From NCBI RefSeq assembly GCF_026571515.1, contig NW_026858706.1, positions 1 through 64,000 on the forward strand: 64,000 nucleotides of DNA, read 5' to 3'. The DNA comes from Ruditapes philippinarum. Its lineage: Eukaryota. The translations under genes and the position numbers were made by a program. Below, piece after piece: positions 26,941-32,284 of this stretch; the stretch's first letter is position 1, and every line of letters begins with the position of its first letter. The notes under the pieces are model-generated. The model was not told where the DNA came from, made no database searches, and saw nothing but the letters and a program-made list of their open reading frames with translations.

Positions 26941-28243
26941 TTCCAACACTTCCAGTGTGATGCGATGTTTATTATACTGTACCGAGTAACAAATCAATGT
27001 TTAAGATAGTATCTCCGACATAATGCGCGTGAGGACCTATGAGTAAAAGTTAAATCTGTTTAGGTACTCGAAATATATCAAAGACAATTCCTGTCTATTA
27101 CAATGCTTAAATGATATGTTAAGTACAATTTACATACAAATGTCCTGAAACATATCTTAGGAGTTCACATAAAAGCATATAATGGTGCTGTTTTAGCTGA
27201 ATTGATATATTAAATGCATTATTAAACATATCTCTAGGTAGTGAACTTTTTTTAAAATGCTTATGCTGAATATGAAAGGTTGCACAATTGTAAAAAAGTG
27301 ACTTTCTTTGTGTATTCTTTATACTGAAAAATCATTGAAGTCAATATCGGATATAGTGATAGAATATGATTCTATTTTACAAAAGCAACTATTTAGTATT
27401 TTCAAAATTCATTTTATGAATAAATTAAAAAGTGCTGTGAAAAATAATGGCAACTACGTGCTTATGTACTGTTTAAAACAAAGTTCTTTTGAGAACATTT
27501 TTTATCATTCATCAAGGATAAAGATATTAGAACTTGTTGATATTTCTCACAAAAGTGAAGTGTATAACTCAAATAAAGGTGAAAACAAATGATCGAACTT
27601 CTTCATTTTGTAACTGCTGGTTTGCTTTTACTATTCAACGCAAGATTTTATATTATATAACTTATGAACTTTGCAAAACTGTCTGAGATAATCAAATTTA
27701 GTTCATGAGCAATTTATAAAATCAGAATAATAGAGAGAAAATGTACATAAATGTGACTCAAAGAATTCAGTATTCCTATTTTTGAGAGACATTAGTATTG
27801 TACGGTGAAGTCATTAATTTAAATTATTACCACCTGATGTATAGGTTGGTTATTTTTCTCTACAGTAGAATAAGCTACACTACAGATATAATCTTGTCTT
27901 TTTGTAAAGACATTTAAAGAGTGTTATTAAAAATATAATAAGATACAACAATACAATTATTGTGTATTCAAGTACCATTAAATGTTATGATGTTTAAAAG
28001 TTAAGCATGGGTAGCAAAATTTTGTTAATCTGTTATCTTGATATTTTCCAGTTCTTTTTGTTATTGCCTATAGGAATGAAGAATTCAATAGCTTATCTTA
28101 TTATTATCATGATTTATATGTCATTTAACATGACCTTTGATCGAAAATACAAGTTATTCTATTCTATTTTATCATCGAACCGAAATGTGATGTTGCCATG
28201 AGACATTACGAATTGTTACCCTCTGACGTACACCTGTGCTATA

Positions 28244-29144
28244 TGTCACGGTTCAGAATAGTTCACTATATAGGGGAGAAGATGTGTAAGCGGCCGGATA
28301 GCTCAGTCGGTAGAGCCGCGGTACGGTATTCCGAGGGTCCCGGGTTCGAGTCCCGGTCAGGCTGCACATTTTTCTCACCCTGTGACATATGGGGCCCAAC
28401 GTGGGGCCGTGACTGCCTCTAGCTCAGAGTTCAATTGGCATTGCTCTGTAGCTTAGTTAAATTCGAGGACGAATTTCAATATTTTCGTGAAGTATGTCAC
28501 GGCTCAGAACTGTTCACTACTAGTATATAGGGGAGAAAATGTGTAAGCGGCCGGATAGCTCTGTCGGTAGAGCCGCGATACGGTATTCCGAGGGTCCCGG
28601 GTTCGAGTCCCGGTCAGGCTGCACATTTTTCTCACCCTGTGACATTTGGCGCCCAACGTGGGGCCGTGACTGCCTCTAGCTCAGAGTTCAATTAGCATTG
28701 CTCTGTAGCTTTGTGAAATTCGAGGACGAATTTCAATATTGTTGTGAAGTATGATACGGCTCAGAACTGTTCACTACTAGTATATAGGGGAGAAAATGTG
28801 TAAACGGCAGGATAACTCAGTCGGTAGAGCCGCGGAACGGTATTCCGAAGGTCTCGGGTTCGAGTCCCGGTCAGGCTGCACATTTTTCTCACCCTGTGAC
28901 ATTTGGCGCCCAACGGGGGACCGTGACTGAATACAACTCAGAGTTTAATTCACATTGGTCTGTAACTCTGTAAAATTCGAGGACGAATTTCAATATAACA
29001 GGGGAGTATGTCACGGTTCAGAACAGTTCACTATATAGATGTGTAAGCGGCCGGATAGCTCAGTCGGTAGAGCCGCGGTACGGTATTCCGAGGGTCCCGA
29101 GTTCGATTCCCGGTCAGGCTGCACATTTTGCTCACCCTGTGACA
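28244..29144 (+). mobile_element. Tandem TRIM (non-autonomous LTR retroelement) with tRNA-derived LTRs: 4 LTRs and 3 internal domains
   Basis: LTRs TGTCAC...GTGACA at 28244-28387, 28495-28644, 28752-28901 and 29009-29144. Three internal segments of 107 bp each. PBS TGGCGCCCAACGTGGGGC (28647-28664) starts 2 nt after the LTR. PPT ACAGGGGAGTA precedes the last LTR. TSD TATA at 28240-28243 and 29145-29148. Confidence 0.93.
28292..28364 (+). ncRNA. tRNA-derived Pol III cassette inside LTR1, repeated in all four LTRs; not a canonical tRNA
   Basis: GGCCGGA TAGCTCAGTCGGTAGAGC ... GGGTC CCGGG TTCGAGT CCCGG TCAGGCT. D arm, T arm and A/B boxes are intact and a T5 run follows. The anticodon stem has two mispairs and a non-consensus loop (ACGGTAT). 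Confidence 0.75.
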
Positions 29145-29692
29145 TATATTAATGCAATTTATTCATAATAAGGCACCCTTTCTCTACTTAAATTAACCTA
29201 ATACGTCGAAACAAAATACCATATCATCACGAGAATGTCGAGATTATTTTCCTCACAATTTTGTCTCATTTGTATTTACTGTATATATGTTCCTCCATTA
29301 CTCATCTATTACCCTAATCACGACTGTGTTGTCTGTTTAATGCGAATGTGTGTATAACTAAATGTTCTCAAATAGCATTGTTTTAATAAAATTTTCGGGG
29401 ATTTAAAATCTAGTTCGTTGTAAAAAAAAAACTATAAACAAAAAAATAAAAAAGAAAAAAACGCCTTTTTCAGGTTTCGGAACACTCTACCACTACGTCA
29501 TTATGCTTAACGCAATAAAATGAGTGATTGATTAGGTGGTAAAAGATTGTACACTTTTATATATAAGAATTATCGACACCCTATTTGTCAATATTGATGT
29601 AAACAGATAATGAAAGGAATAGCGAATTCGAGCTGTATAATGTAAAAGTCATGTAAAAATAAGATGACTGCATTTTTTTTTAATTTCAGAAA

Positions 29693-32284
29693 ATGGCACT
29701 TCCAATTTTTGCTCAGTCGATCTCTATTTGTTTGTCAAATATACTTGGGAGTGTTGGTGTTAATGAGACGACGGTGACAAAACGAAGAGAGATGTATAAT
29801 CAAGCTGAAGTGATCAAGGAGATTGGTTTTAATCTGATGGCAAAATGTTGTGGTCATCTTGGGTTTGAGAATTCTAAGACATGTCATTTTGGGAGTAAAA
29901 TGGAAGGTTCGACAACCCTTGGTATGAAATCTGACATCGACCTCGTTTATTTTAGCCCTGTTACGTATGAAATAGTACAGTCGAATTGTGAGAAAAAATC
30001 AAGTGTTTTTACTTTAATGATGGACAATTCAGCACCAACCGGCCATTGTAAACTTGATGTGATATCTGGACCATCTTATGAAGGTCTTTATTACTACCTT
30101 CATAAGCACAATCAATTTATTCCAAACTCACATATTGATAAATATTGTCGAAGTTTGACTGATATGTACGGGTTATCGCCATTGACAAAGAAATGCCCTT
30201 CATCAAGTTACAACAATATTGATAATATCAAAGGGATCTTAGTACCACCTTATCTGTCCATGACAAATGGAATCATAAATCGATTTCGAACTTACCAATG
30301 GCCTACCAAACAACTTATTGTCAAAGTTAAAGAAGAAAATGGTCTTGTTGTACCCATTGGCCATCCGAAAAGTGAGAATGCTAATGTCGAATGGAGAGTA
30401 TCGTATTCCTTTGCTGAAAGGTTGTTGATATTTGATTTCAATATTACACAACTGAGATCTTTAGTTATTCTTAAAATGCTTAAGAAAACATTCTTTCAAC
30501 CAATCGCTGGCGATCAATTTACAAGTTATCATTGTAAAACCATATTGTTCTACACCATAGCAAGAACGTCGCCGTATCTATGGAGAGAGGATCGACTATT
30601 TGATTGCATATTGAATTGCTTATCTACTCTTCAACATTTTCTTTTTTCTCGTTATTGTCCACATTTCTTTGACCCTTCTGTGAATTTGTTTATTGGAAAG
30701 TTGACTCCGTTGCTATGCAGAAGTCTAGGTAACATTTTATATAAACTCATGAATGACCATCTTCTGAGTTTGCTTCAGATTCAAATCGATGATATAGGAC
30801 AAAGAATGCTCAATGTTTCCATAACCACAAGCTGCTTCAGATCACGTAAATCTATTGAAAAAAGAATGATTGCAGAAATTGTTTTTGATAGAAACAATTA
30901 TCTAATTGAACATTCCAGACACCCGTATGTATTGATGTTTCAAAAATCATTGAAGAAACAGATATATACGGGTTTTCGGCTGATCAATCAGTTGTTGCAT
31001 ATTATTGGCAATAGTAATAAAAAAGAGCAGTTTGTAGCTAGGTTGATGTTGCCGCATTTCATAGCAAAGCATTCCTCACTTCTTGCAGCGTATCGAATAA
31101 AGAAGAAACAACCATTATCAGATGAACTCATAGATCTGTTCAAAATAGGTTTTCAGACAGATGCCACATCAACAAGGTTGAAATTAGCATCCGTCCTGTG
31201 CTGCAATAACGAGTATGAAAAGTCTTTAAAGGTGTTAAATGAAATATGTAAAATATATGACACAAGCCCAATGCTTATACCGACATGTTTTACCTACATA
31301 TTACCATATACATCATTTTGGGAGGAGCGTTACAAAATTTTATCAGAGTTGCTTAGTGACGTATGCTGCAGAAATTCATACTCGTCCTGTGTTGAATTTA
31401 TGAGGAAAGACATTTGGTGTTGCCCGATTGGACTACGGAGGTCTGTTTTTACTTTCTTTACAGATGGCTCGCCCGATTTTGAAAATAACATGTTATTTCA
31501 TGATAAATTTGGAATTGAACTCGACTCGCCAATAATGTTTCATTATCTTAAATATTTAACATACTCTGGCTTGTCATGTAAGAAACACAAAATGTATGCT
31601 TTAAAACAGTTGATGCAAACCGTTGTTGGAAATTCAAAAACATTGAGCAAATATTTCTTTGAAATCGCTAACAGAAAGGATTTGGGAATAGTAAATATGT
31701 TTTGGAGGTGTATGCGTAAGGACTATGAGTTTAATGTCGAGTGTGACAATGCCCTTCCAAAGCTTCTAAACAATTTAAGAGATGACCCTTGGGGAGGCAT
31801 ACGACAATGTCTTATGTACGCATTTGGACAAATGTCACCTATACAACATCCAGAAATAGCTCTGATTCTTATTGGGTATTCTCTTGAACTAGAAAACAAA
31901 ATTGATTTTGCAAGTGCGTTCTACTGGATGTCATTTATCTTAGATCCTAACTGTGTTGCAAATCAGCATTTGTTAAGAGTTCGCCCCAGAAGAGATATTG
32001 ATGAATATCTTAAGGGTTATTGCATCGGAATATACTCACCACAGCTTGAGATGGATTTGATACCTGAAATTGTTGAAGCCTTTGTTAATATAATGAAGGC
32101 TAATATCTACTTGGGCCTCTTACAAGAAGATGATTTTCAAGAAAGTTCCTACGATGCACGAATTTATGTTTGCCTTCTTAACGCACATGTTAGAAAGTTT
32201 GATCAGAACAAAAGGAAACCACTTGAAGTGTTTCCCAGAGATCGTCAAATCGTACAGGCGAAACGGAGTAGACTCTTTTTATAA
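29693..32284 (+). CDS. cGAS-like receptor (Mab-21 nucleotidyltransferase) with C-terminal TPR-like region, 863 aa, single coding exon
   Basis: FGSKMEGSTTLGMKSDIDL (hGS...DhD catalytic motif) with a candidate third Asp in NNIDNIKG. Mab-21 motifs: VPIGHPKS...EWRVSYSFAERLL, TSYHCKTILF, CPHFFDPSVNLF. TPR-like helices RLKLASVL..NEYEKSL and ALILIGYSLELENKIDFASAFYWMSFILDP. A polypyrimidine-TTTCAG acceptor sits 3 nt before the ATG, implying an upstream UTR exon. Confidence 0.93.
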   Translation: MALPIFAQSISICLSNILGSVGVNETTVTKRREMYNQAEVIKEIGFNLMAKCCGHLGFENSKTCHFGSKMEGSTTLGMKSDIDLVYFSPVTYEIVQSNCEKKSSVFTLMMDNSAPTGHCKLDVISGPSYEGLYYYLHKHNQFIPNSHIDKYCRSLTDMYGLSPLTKKCPSSSYNNIDNIKGILVPPYLSMTNGIINRFRTYQWPTKQLIVKVKEENGLVVPIGHPKSENANVEWRVSYSFAERLLIFDFNITQLRSLVILKMLKKTFFQPIAGDQFTSYHCKTILFYTIARTSPYLWREDRLFDCILNCLSTLQHFLFSRYCPHFFDPSVNLFIGKLTPLLCRSLGNILYKLMNDHLLSLLQIQIDDIGQRMLNVSITTSCFRSRKSIEKRMIAEIVFDRNNYLIEHSRHPYVLMFQKSLKKQIYTGFRLINQLLHIIGNSNKKEQFVARLMLPHFIAKHSSLLAAYRIKKKQPLSDELIDLFKIGFQTDATSTRLKLASVLCCNNEYEKSLKVLNEICKIYDTSPMLIPTCFTYILPYTSFWEERYKILSELLSDVCCRNSYSSCVEFMRKDIWCCPIGLRRSVFTFFTDGSPDFENNMLFHDKFGIELDSPIMFHYLKYLTYSGLSCKKHKMYALKQLMQTVVGNSKTLSKYFFEIANRKDLGIVNMFWRCMRKDYEFNVECDNALPKLLNNLRDDPWGGIRQCLMYAFGQMSPIQHPEIALILIGYSLELENKIDFASAFYWMSFILDPNCVANQHLLRVRPRRDIDEYLKGYCIGIYSPQLEMDLIPEIVEAFVNIMKANIYLGLLQEDDFQESSYDARIYVCLLNAHVRKFDQNKRKPLEVFPRDRQIVQAKRSRLFL

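What the first reader, a model, noticed from the sequence alone, without database searches (positions are those of the whole stretch)
28244..29144. Tandem TRIM whose LTRs carry a tRNA-derived Pol III promoter (SINE/LTR hybrid)
Seen: what looks like four tRNA genes is LTR-int-LTR-int-LTR-int-LTR. The LTRs are 136-150 bp with TGTCAC/GTGACA inverted ends, the internal parts are 107 bp and non-coding, the 18-nt PBS is TGGCGCCCAACGTGGGGC, there is a PPT, and one TATA TSD encloses the whole array. Each LTR embeds a tRNA-like unit with A and B boxes. Established: this PBS is the complement of the tRNA-Lys(CUU) 3' end, and plant Cassandra TRIMs carry 5S-derived Pol III promoters in their LTRs and form tandems. 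Inference: a ~400-bp monomer is transcribed by Pol III and borrows Gypsy-type machinery. I recall tRNA-LTR TRIMs being reported from molluscs (name 'Ajax'; unverified here), so the class may be known even if this family is not.
Basis: partly seen in the sequence, partly recalled or inferred. Interest (0 to 1): 0.85.

Follow-up and report, generated by a model that had tools for sequence, protein, structure and literature searches.

The report
Tandem tRNA-bearing mini LTR retrotransposon (Helenus)
What looks like four tRNA genes is one insertion of a tiny non-coding LTR retrotransposon whose repeats carry a tRNA-like sequence, a kind described in 2024 as "Helenus", so it is a real, recently active element but not a new type.

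Summary
Window 28244-29144 is LTR-int-LTR-int-LTR-int-LTR. The four LTRs are 136-150 bp and each holds a tRNA-like unit. The three internal parts are 107 bp with a tRNA-Lys primer site. One TATA target duplication flanks the whole array.

The family is dispersed in this 1.41-Gb genome. There are 2,217 LTR ends and 422 LTR-primer-site junctions. Most full copies are 395-bp monomers. I saw perfect 4-bp duplications in 16 of 18 monomers, 5 tandems and 3 solo LTRs. The two LTRs of young monomers are 99.0% identical when pooled.

The TRIM reading is supported. The name is wrong: Ajax is the 5S-rRNA type from nemerteans, and tRNA-bearing TRIMs are Helenus (Kojima 2024, PMC10886601). That paper already describes them in bivalves with 4-bp duplications, tRNA-Lys primers and Gypsy helpers. 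This family is not in that paper's sequence file but resembles its oyster families.

Details added here:
- Two primer-site variants each match a different host tRNA 3' end.
- Tandems appear to be copied as units.
- Hybrids with Gypsy-type LTRs sit under a single duplication.

Pol III transcription is inferred only; no RNA data could be obtained. The scan found this family and its hybrids before on other DNA of this genome (s1-806773, s1-812926, s1-805756, s1-804373).

The parts
28240..28243 (+). left copy of the 4-bp target-site duplication (TATA)
   Evidence: It matches 29145-29148. Perfect 4-bp TSDs are the rule for the family.
28244..28387 (+). LTR1 (144 bp, TGTCAC...GTGACA). The tRNA-like unit is at 28292-28364 and the T5 run at 28369-28373.
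   Evidence: It is 96.5% identical to the LTR of a young monomer (L003).
28388..28494 (+). internal part 1 (type a). Its primer site carries one change (TGGGGCCCAACGTGGGGC).
28495..28644 (+). LTR2 (150 bp, with a 6-bp insertion relative to the usual 144 bp). The tRNA-like unit is at 28549-28621 and the T5 run at 28626-28630.
28645..28751 (+). internal part 2 (type a). TT spacer, 18-nt primer site at 28647-28664, hairpin at 28715-28734, 3' end GTGAAGTA.
   Evidence: The primer site is the complement of host tRNA-Lys(CUU) gene 3' ends plus CCA.
28752..28901 (+). LTR3 (150 bp, start mutated to TGATAC). The tRNA-like unit is at 28806-28878 and the T5 run at 28883-28887.
28902..29008 (+). internal part 3 (type b). 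Primer-site variant TGGCGCCCAACGGGGGAC at 28904-28921, the same hairpin, purine tract AGGGGAG at 29000-29006.
   Evidence: The variant is the complement of a second set of host tRNA-like genes.
29009..29144 (+). LTR4 (136 bp, with an 8-bp deletion). The tRNA-like unit is at 29049-29121. The T run is only T4, at 29126-29129.
   Evidence: It is closest to LTR1 (97.1%).
29145..29148 (+). right copy of the target-site duplication (TATA)

Best explanation
The array is one insertion of a non-coding terminal-repeat retrotransposon in miniature of the Helenus type (a TRIM whose LTRs contain a tRNA-derived sequence). It is present as a tandem with four LTRs and three internal parts.

Shown here:
- The unit is LTR (144 bp) + TT + 18-nt primer site + two hairpins + a short purine tract + LTR.
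- The ends are TG...CA and the target duplication is 4 bp.
- Hundreds of dispersed copies exist, and some have identical LTR pairs.
- The primer site is the exact complement of host tRNA 3' ends.
- Hybrid elements join Gypsy-type LTRs to Helenus parts under one duplication.

Inferred:
- The tRNA-like unit, with its A box (TAGCTCAGTCGG) and B box (GGTTCGAGTCC), recruits RNA polymerase III.
- The T5 run 4 nt after the unit is the terminator. The repeated 'R' of the RNA would then be the tRNA-like unit itself.
- A copyable RNA of about 330 nt must read through the T5 of the first LTR and stop in the next LTR, or in a later one, which yields tandems.
- That RNA is packaged by a Gypsy-type helper, primed by tRNA-Lys(CUU) or a second tRNA, reverse-transcribed, and integrated by the helper's integrase.
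- This particular tandem was probably copied as a unit, not built on the spot.
For: Structure and TSD.

tRNA-like units: (34.5-44.5 bits).

Dispersal: 3,280 first-look candidates; 422 junctions, control 0; 2,217 LTR ends, control 0.

TSDs: perfect in 16 of 18 monomers, in tandems L002, L009, L024 and L046, and in solo LTRs L047, L054 and L048.

Recent activity: LTR pairs are 99.0% identical when pooled, and 6 of 16 pairs are identical.

Primer:
- 16 host loci read GGTTCGAGCCCCACGTTGGGCG and carry the anticodon loop CTCTTAA.
- About 55 clustered loci read GGTTCGAGTCCCCCGTTGGGCG and match the second primer-site variant.
- In the first 100 exact junctions the variants occur 40 and 53 times, with 7 hybrids.
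- Both variants occur on identical backbones.

Helper:
- L040 has RVT_1, RNase H, Integrase_H2C2 and rve.
- It has the same 18-nt primer site, LTR ends TGTCGC...GCGACA, and the same hairpin-plus-purine-tract layout before the 3' LTR.
- Hybrids lie under single TSDs at L036 (TAAC), L010 (ATAC) and L004 (TTCT).

Copied as a unit:
- In L024 the outer LTRs are identical and the middle LTR differs at 8 sites.
- L046 shows the same trend: 8 differences between the outer LTRs, against 18 and 14 to the middle one.
- The window shows it too: 4 mismatches between LTR1 and LTR4, against 6-13 for the other LTR pairs.

The class, its 4-bp TSD, the tRNA-Lys primer and the Gypsy helper in bivalves are published: PMC10886601.
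Against: - No RNA evidence.
- The T5 lies inside every LTR, so it should also stop Pol III in the first LTR. Read-through is assumed, not shown.
- The lack of other T4+ runs in the unit is not significant (P = 0.46 in shuffles).
- The most recently active monomers (type a) lack a clear purine tract (GTGAAGTA), which is unusual for plus-strand priming.
- The window's LTRs differ by 3-10%, so this copy is old. Its history (copied as a unit, or later recombination or conversion) cannot be settled from one locus.
- In tandems L002, L004 and L009 the outer and middle LTRs are equally alike, so those copies are uninformative.
- The only Gypsy copy examined in full (L040) is broken into several reading frames.
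Confidence: 0.85

Rival explanations
1. It is the same TRIM, but its copyable RNA is made by RNA polymerase II or by read-through from host genes. On this reading the tRNA-like unit is a relic of an old SINE insertion, or serves another role such as RNA stability, packaging, or a short Pol III by-product.
For: - The T5 directly after the tRNA-like unit in every LTR should stop Pol III before the primer site.
- A TATA-like motif (TATATAG in the window, TATTTAG or TATTTCG in young copies) lies about 25 bp before the tRNA-like unit.
- PMC10886601 itself says Pol III use is unvalidated for Helenus.
Against: - The A and B boxes are kept across distant bivalve Helenus families while the rest of the LTR diverges (PMC10886601 section 3.5).
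- No polyadenylation signal is evident in the LTR.
- Cassandra, the 5S analogue, is reported to produce transcripts from its Pol III promoter (as cited in PMC10886601).
Confidence: 0.25
2. The window's tandem arose on the spot after a monomer inserted, through unequal crossing-over or gene conversion between LTRs. It was not copied as a tandem.
For: - A single TSD is kept by either route.
- LTRs in the array differ by 3-10%.
- Long satellite-like arrays of the family with a 746-bp period exist, which shows that local amplification happens.
Against: - The array contains two kinds of internal part (a, a, b). Unequal exchange within one monomer cannot produce that.
- The a-b heterodimer recurs at independent loci with different TSDs (L002, L024, L046; L004 with an extra 5' stub), and L009 carries it in the reverse order, b-a.
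- In L024 the outer LTRs are identical while the middle one differs at 8 sites.
- In the window the two outer LTRs are the closest pair (97.1%), and the two inner LTRs share a 6-bp insertion.
Confidence: 0.25
3. It is a cluster of four genuine tRNA genes.
For: All four units pass the Rfam tRNA gathering score. ARAGORN names them Pro(CGG) in the window and Thr(GGU) in young copies.
Against: - Scores are low at 34-44 bits.
- The acceptor and anticodon stems contain mismatches.
- Position 33 is A or C instead of U (reading).
- The predicted isotype changes between copies.
- Every unit sits inside an LTR with TG...CA ends next to a primer site, and the family has thousands of LTR copies with TSDs.
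Confidence: 0.01
4. It is a tRNA-derived SINE, or a SINE-derived satellite, copied by a LINE.
For: It has a tRNA-like head with A and B boxes, and it forms tandem repeats.
Against: - There is no LINE-like tail and no A-rich or simple-repeat tail.
- The repeats are direct LTRs with TG...CA ends.
- An 18-nt primer site lies 2 nt after the LTR.
- TSDs are a fixed 4 bp.
- Solo LTRs with TSDs exist.
- Hybrids with Gypsy LTRs exist.

Confidence: 0.02

Closest known systems
Helenus (TRIMs with a tRNA-derived sequence in the LTR; Kojima 2024, PMC10886601), especially the oyster families Helenus-3_CGi and Helenus-4_SaGl
   Same: - A non-coding LTR-int-LTR of a few hundred bp.
- A tRNA-like unit with A and B boxes in the LTR, followed by a T run.
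- LTR ends TGTCAC...CTGTGACA.
- A TTTGGCGCCCAACG... primer site.
- The internal hairpin AAATTCGAGGACGAATTTC.
- A GGGGAGTA-type end before the 3' LTR.
- 4-bp TSDs and a proposed Gypsy helper using tRNA-Lys.

   Different: - None of 16 family-specific words of 9-15 nt tried from this LTR, primer-site region and internal part occur in the paper's sequence file. It is therefore a different, probably uncatalogued, family.
- Here the full 18-nt match to tRNA-Lys(CUU) is kept, and a second variant matches another host tRNA.
- The active type-a monomers lack the G-rich purine tract.
[quoted passage not shown]
   Same: It is a TRIM with a presumed Pol III promoter in the LTR (the 'TRIMp3' concept).
   Different: Ajax carries a 5S fragment, makes 5-bp TSDs, uses tRNA-Leu and is known only from two nemerteans. 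The window element has a tRNA-like unit, 4-bp TSDs and a tRNA-Lys primer.
Cassandra (plant TRIM with 5S rRNA in the LTRs; Kalendar 2008 and 2020, as cited in PMC10886601 and listed as PMC7215508)
   Same: It has a Pol III-type small-RNA gene inside each LTR and forms tandem arrays.
   Different: Cassandra is 5S-derived, occurs in plants, is 565-860 bp long, and has no proposed helper.
biv-TRIM (Satovic et al. 2019, PMC6934838)
   Same: It is a bivalve TRIM that occurs as monomers, solo repeats and tandems.
   Different: biv-TRIM has 202-218-bp repeats, a 77-80-bp internal part with the motif TGATCCCAAAGGAC, and no clear primer site. None of this matches the window element.
LTR-11_DR (zebrafish Helenus)
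   Same: It is a Helenus family with thousands of copies, and tandem arrays have been observed.
   Different: It comes from a different host and has a different sequence. I made no sequence comparison here.

Membership tests
Helenus (TRIMp3, tRNA type) | Short non-coding element: two LTRs around a short internal part (published range 311-1263 bp) | tested here: met
   395-bp monomers (144 + 107 + 144 bp) at 16 or more loci. The window holds a 901-bp tandem.
Helenus (TRIMp3, tRNA type) | tRNA-derived sequence with conserved A and B boxes inside the LTR | tested here: met
   Rfam tRNA scores of 34.5-44.5 bits in all four LTRs. TAGCTCAGTCGG and GGTTCGAGTCC are read.
Helenus (TRIMp3, tRNA type) | Primer-binding site just after the 5' LTR, complementary to a tRNA | tested here: met
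   The 18-nt site lies 2 nt after the LTR. Its complement without CCA ends 16 host loci that carry a CTCTTAA anticodon loop (Lys-CUU). The second variant matches about 55 other clustered loci.
Helenus (TRIMp3, tRNA type) | Polypurine tract before the 3' LTR | tested here: inconclusive
   Type-b internal parts end in AGGGGAGTA. The more recently active type-a parts end in GGTGAAGTA, which is only weakly purine-rich.
Helenus (TRIMp3, tRNA type) | 4-bp target-site duplications (animal Helenus) | tested here: met
   Perfect in 16 of 18 monomers, 5 tandems, 3 solo LTRs and 3 hybrids.
Helenus (TRIMp3, tRNA type) | Sequence relatedness to published bivalve Helenus families | tested here: inconclusive
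   Shared motifs with Helenus-3_CGi and Helenus-4_SaGl were read by eye. No exact family-specific words were found. I ran no alignment, because the published sequences could not be passed to the tools by reference.
Helenus (TRIMp3, tRNA type) | Transcription from the LTR's Pol III promoter | not testable with these tools
This is also unvalidated in the literature.
Ajax | 5S rRNA-derived promoter fragment in the LTR, with 5-bp TSDs | tested here: not met
   No 5S match in 27500-30000 at E <= 1. TSDs are 4 bp.
tRNA-derived SINE | Single tRNA-like head, LINE-related or A-rich tail, no LTRs, variable TSDs | tested here: not met
   Direct LTRs, a primer site and fixed 4-bp TSDs.
Genuine tRNA gene cluster | Canonical cloverleaf with U33, a stable isotype, and no mobile-element ends | tested here: not met
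   Mismatched stems, A or C at position 33, and an isotype call that flips between Pro and Thr among copies. The units are embedded in LTRs.
biv-TRIM | 202-218-bp terminal repeats, 77-80-bp internal part with TGATCCCAAAGGAC | tested here: not met
   The lengths and the motif are absent.

The most novel reading that the evidence does not exclude
This Helenus family may be a currently or very recently active parasite of one Gypsy lineage, with two properties not yet described for TRIMs.

1. It switches freely between two host tRNAs as primer. It leaves two primer-site versions, plus hybrids of the two, on otherwise identical copies.
2. Its tandem forms, including an a-b heterodimer with two different internal parts, are themselves replicating units. 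They would be made when the polymerase reads through the terminator that sits in every LTR.

Hybrid helper-parasite insertions under one target duplication would then be direct records of co-packaging.
Probability: 0.45. Interest if true: 0.45.

Novelty: new member of a known kind. Interest (0 to 1): 0.3.

Why it matters
For annotation, these units pass tRNA detectors, and the genome holds about 2,200 such LTRs. They would therefore inflate tRNA gene counts, as PMC10886601 showed for rust fungi.

For biology, the family is young: some copies have identical LTR pairs. It has a traceable helper and natural hybrids. That makes it a good system to test three open points:
- whether a TRIM really uses Pol III;
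- how a terminator inside the LTR is bypassed;
- how a non-coding parasite stays matched to its helper.

It does not open a new class.

Tried and rejected
**Readings rejected**
- Genuine tRNA cluster, LINE-driven SINE or satellite, and biv-TRIM. See the rival explanations and membership test.
- Self-priming by the LTR's own tRNA-like 3' end. By my own reading of the letters, not a tool result, only 8 of 15 positions agree with the primer site. PMC10886601 also found none.

**Analyses that gave no usable result**
- Selection against Pol III terminators inside the unit: not significant (P = 0.46).
- MFE folding of the tRNA-like unit gives no cloverleaf and an unremarkable z-score. This is uninformative.
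- A TATA box as a general feature: TATATAG occurs in the window copy only. Young copies have TATTTAG or TATTTCG.
- Host identity: a family-specific word from the Mytilus Helenus-1_MyGa LTR has no match with up to 3 mismatches. The host is probably not Mytilus, but it remains unnamed.
- Isotype of the second primer tRNA: a UUU-loop pattern found nothing, one locus has a CUU loop, and a fixed-offset pattern printed only 4 loci. It is undetermined.

I therefore could not inspect the LTRs and primer sites of the Gypsy copies with long open frames found.

- I built no consensus of the element or of the Gypsy copies and repaired no frame, as required. Copies were only compared.

Full report
**1. The observation**

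TRF finds a 257-bp period with 3.5 copies at 89% matches over 28267-29145. The repeat finder finds four copies of the LTR core.

My boundaries:
- LTR1 28244-28387 (144 bp), INT1 28388-28494.
- LTR2 28495-28644 (150 bp), INT2 28645-28751.
- LTR3 28752-28901 (150 bp), INT3 28902-29008.
- LTR4 29009-29144 (136 bp).

The LTRs begin TGTCAC (LTR3 begins TGATAC) and end CTGTGACA. TATA lies directly outside both ends, at 28240-28243 and 29145-29148.

Each LTR holds a 73-nt unit that Rfam scores as tRNA at 34.5-44.5 bits, against a gathering score of 29. ARAGORN calls three of them tRNA-Pro(CGG).

- The exact 18-nt primer site occurs only in INT2. INT1 has one change and INT3 carries TGGCGCCCAACGGGGGAC.
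- Only INT3 has a clear purine tract (AGGGGAG). INT1 and INT2 end in GTGAAGTA.

This is the only copy in the window.

**2. It is a dispersed mobile family**

A search of the window's own 1.41-Gb genome with one LTR plus internal part gave 3,280 first-look candidates. All 40 scored places were copies. Pattern counts:
- 422 LTR-end/primer-site junctions with up to 2 mismatches.
- 2,217 LTR 3' ends with up to 2 mismatches.
- Reversed-pattern controls were 0 in both searches.

In the 30 loci fetched, the usual form is a 395-bp monomer of 144 + 107 + 144 bp. The four bases on either side are identical in 16 of 18 monomers. One has 3 of 4 matching and one has a damaged end.

A sample of LTRs without a perfect partner gave several forms:
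- Solo LTRs with TSDs: L047 TATA, L054 TATT, L048 TGAT.
- Older monomers with the type-b internal part.
- Long arrays with a 746-bp higher-order period (C1205, C839, C210).

TSDs are AT-rich (TATA, TTTA, ATTA and similar). The window's TATA is therefore typical.

The two LTRs of type-a monomers are 99.0% identical when pooled, and 6 of 16 pairs are identical. The family was therefore active recently. The window's own LTRs differ by 3-10%, so this copy is older.

**3. The tRNA-like unit**

It has a good A box (TAGCTCAGTCGG) and a perfect B box (GGTTCGAGTCC). It also has:
- a G-A mismatch in the acceptor stem;
- a mismatch in the anticodon stem;
- A or C where U33 should be (and my reading).

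ARAGORN's isotype changes from Pro(CGG) in the window to Thr(GGU) in young copies, and in some copies it makes no call. These are not working tRNA genes.

Four bases after the unit comes a T5 run. In 15 of 16 young monomers, the T5 in each LTR is the only run of four or more T in the whole element, apart from one extra run in L030. By shuffling, however, the absence of other runs is not significant (P = 0.46).

**4. The primer**

The complement of the primer site without CCA, preceded by a B box, occurs exactly at 16 host loci. These are mostly clustered, and 15 of them carry the anticodon loop CTCTTAA, which is tRNA-Lys(CUU).

The second variant (…AACGGGGGAC) is the exact complement of GTCCCCCGTTGGGCG. 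That sequence ends about 55 other clustered tRNA-like loci. I could not name their isotype.

Among the first 100 exact junctions listed, 40 carry variant 1, 53 carry variant 2, 6 carry the hybrid GT…AC and 1 carries GG…GC. Twelve equal-length young monomers show the same backbone haplotype with either variant.

In retroviral replication the plus-strand copy of the primer site is templated by the primer tRNA. That is established knowledge. From it I infer that one lineage has been primed by both tRNAs, and that the hybrids are resolved heteroduplexes.

**5. The helper**

Outside this family the exact 18-nt site is rare; about a dozen places were found.

One of them, L040, is a roughly 9-kb element:
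- It has 587-bp LTRs with ends TGTCGC…GCGACA and the same primer site.
- A purine tract GAGGGGAGGA precedes the 3' LTR.
- Its open frames carry RVT_1, RNase H, Integrase_H2C2 and rve in the Ty3/Gypsy order.
- This copy is split into several frames.

A protein search shows a large related clade (3,071 first-look candidates), many with open frames over 1,300 aa. I could not fetch their ends.

Just before the purine tract, the Helenus internal part, L040 and a related non-coding element in L036 all have a hairpin. It has the same loop-closing GGAC core but different stem letters: AAATTCG-AGGA-CGAATTT against AAATGTCG-GGA-CGACATTT. Similar hairpins can be read in many published bivalve Helenus internal parts. 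The paper does not mention them.

Three hybrids lie under single perfect TSDs:
- L036: LTR'-int'-LTR'-primer site-INTb-Helenus LTR, with TSD TAAC.
- L010: Gypsy-like LTR-primer site-INT-LTR-INT-LTR, with TSD ATAC.
- L004: a 13-nt stub of the Gypsy-type LTR start fused to a Helenus tandem, with TSD TTCT.

In L036 and L010 the join is exactly at the shared primer site. This fits a strand transfer between two co-packaged RNAs. Earlier follow-ups of this scan reported the same kind of hybrid elsewhere in this genome. I found mine before reading those notes.

**6. The tandem**

There are two kinds of internal part. They differ mainly in the last 12 bases and in a few bases after the primer site. 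The window is a-a-b. The a-b heterodimer recurs with different TSDs at L002, L024 and L046. L004 has it with an extra 5' stub, and L009 has the reverse order, b-a.

If a tandem is copied through RNA, reverse transcription rebuilds the two outer LTRs as identical copies. Inner LTRs are inherited like internal sequence. The data:
- L024 shows exactly this pattern: 0 differences between the outer LTRs and 8 to the middle one.
- L046 shows the same trend: 8 against 18 and 14.
- In the window, LTR1 and LTR4 are the closest pair (4 mismatches, 97.1%), and LTR2 and LTR3 alone share a 6-bp insertion.
- L002, L004 and L009 are uninformative.

I therefore favour copying as a unit, by read-through of the terminator in the inner LTR. 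I put local recombination at about 0.25.

**7. Comparison with what is known**

Kojima 2024 (PMC10886601) defined Helenus as TRIMs with a tRNA-derived sequence in the LTR. The paper reports:
- 51 families in five orders of pteriomorph bivalves;
- 4-bp TSDs in animals;
- tRNA-Lys among the bivalve primers;
- Gypsy elements such as Gypsy-125_CGi as likely helpers;
- tandem arrays in zebrafish;
- that Pol III use is not validated.

None of 16 family-specific words from this element occur in the paper's FASTA file. The oyster families Helenus-3_CGi and Helenus-4_SaGl share several features with it:
- the TGTCAC…CTGTGACA ends;
- the TTTGGCGCCCAACG start of the internal part;
- the AAATTCGAGGACGAATTTC hairpin;
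- the …GGGGAGTA end.

It is not biv-TRIM.

**8. Verdict**

This is a real, well-formed, recently active family. It is a new member of a published kind, and the scan had already seen it on other DNA of this genome.

The added observations are modest, and all need RNA or bench data:
- two primer-site variants;
- copying of tandems as units;
- a hairpin shared with the helper;
- a weak purine tract in the active monomers.

Interest is 0.3.

Noticed in passing
window 29693-32284 (+): An 863-aa single open frame starts about 550 bp downstream of the array and has a Mab-21_C domain (PF20266, E = 7.5e-15). It may be a cGAS/Mab21-like gene, in which case the TRIM array sits in what would be its upstream region.
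   Followed up: partly
L058 (G000:C1205:141000-146000), L059 (C839:8500-11500), L051 (C210:46250-48050): Long arrays with a 746-bp higher-order period. Each period is LTR-INTb-LTR plus an INTb split by an insertion of about 240 bp. The TRIM has seeded a satellite-like repeat.
   Followed up: partly
L003, L005-L007, L013-L030 (type-a monomers): The most recently active monomers end their internal part in GGTGAAGTA instead of the G-rich purine tract of type b and of published Helenus families. Even so, their ends and TSDs are precise. How plus-strand priming works there is unexplained.
   Followed up: partly
L008 (C12402), L011/L012 (C12878), L033 (C9717): Head-to-head (inverted) joins between Helenus copies. 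In L033 an inverted Helenus LTR abuts the primer site of a Gypsy-type LTR. These may be reverse-transcription hairpin products or rearrangements.
   Followed up: no
G000:C14685:24809-29993 and other clusters listed: Tandem arrays, about 650 bp apart, of tRNA-like genes ending in GGTTCGAGTCCCCCGTTGGGCG. This is the exact complement of the second Helenus primer-site variant. Their isotype was not determined.
   Followed up: partly
L036 1303-3584 (G000:C12446): A roughly 2.3-kb non-coding LTR element. It has 606-bp LTRs that are 99.2% identical and a 1.07-kb internal part with no ORF of 100 aa or more. It shares its primer site, TGTCAC start, hairpin and purine tract with the Gypsy in L040, so it is a second non-autonomous dependant of the same helper group.
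   Followed up: partly
window 27701-27783 (+): A weak U6 snRNA match (16.3 bits against a gathering score of 44, E = 0.93). It is most likely noise.
   Followed up: no
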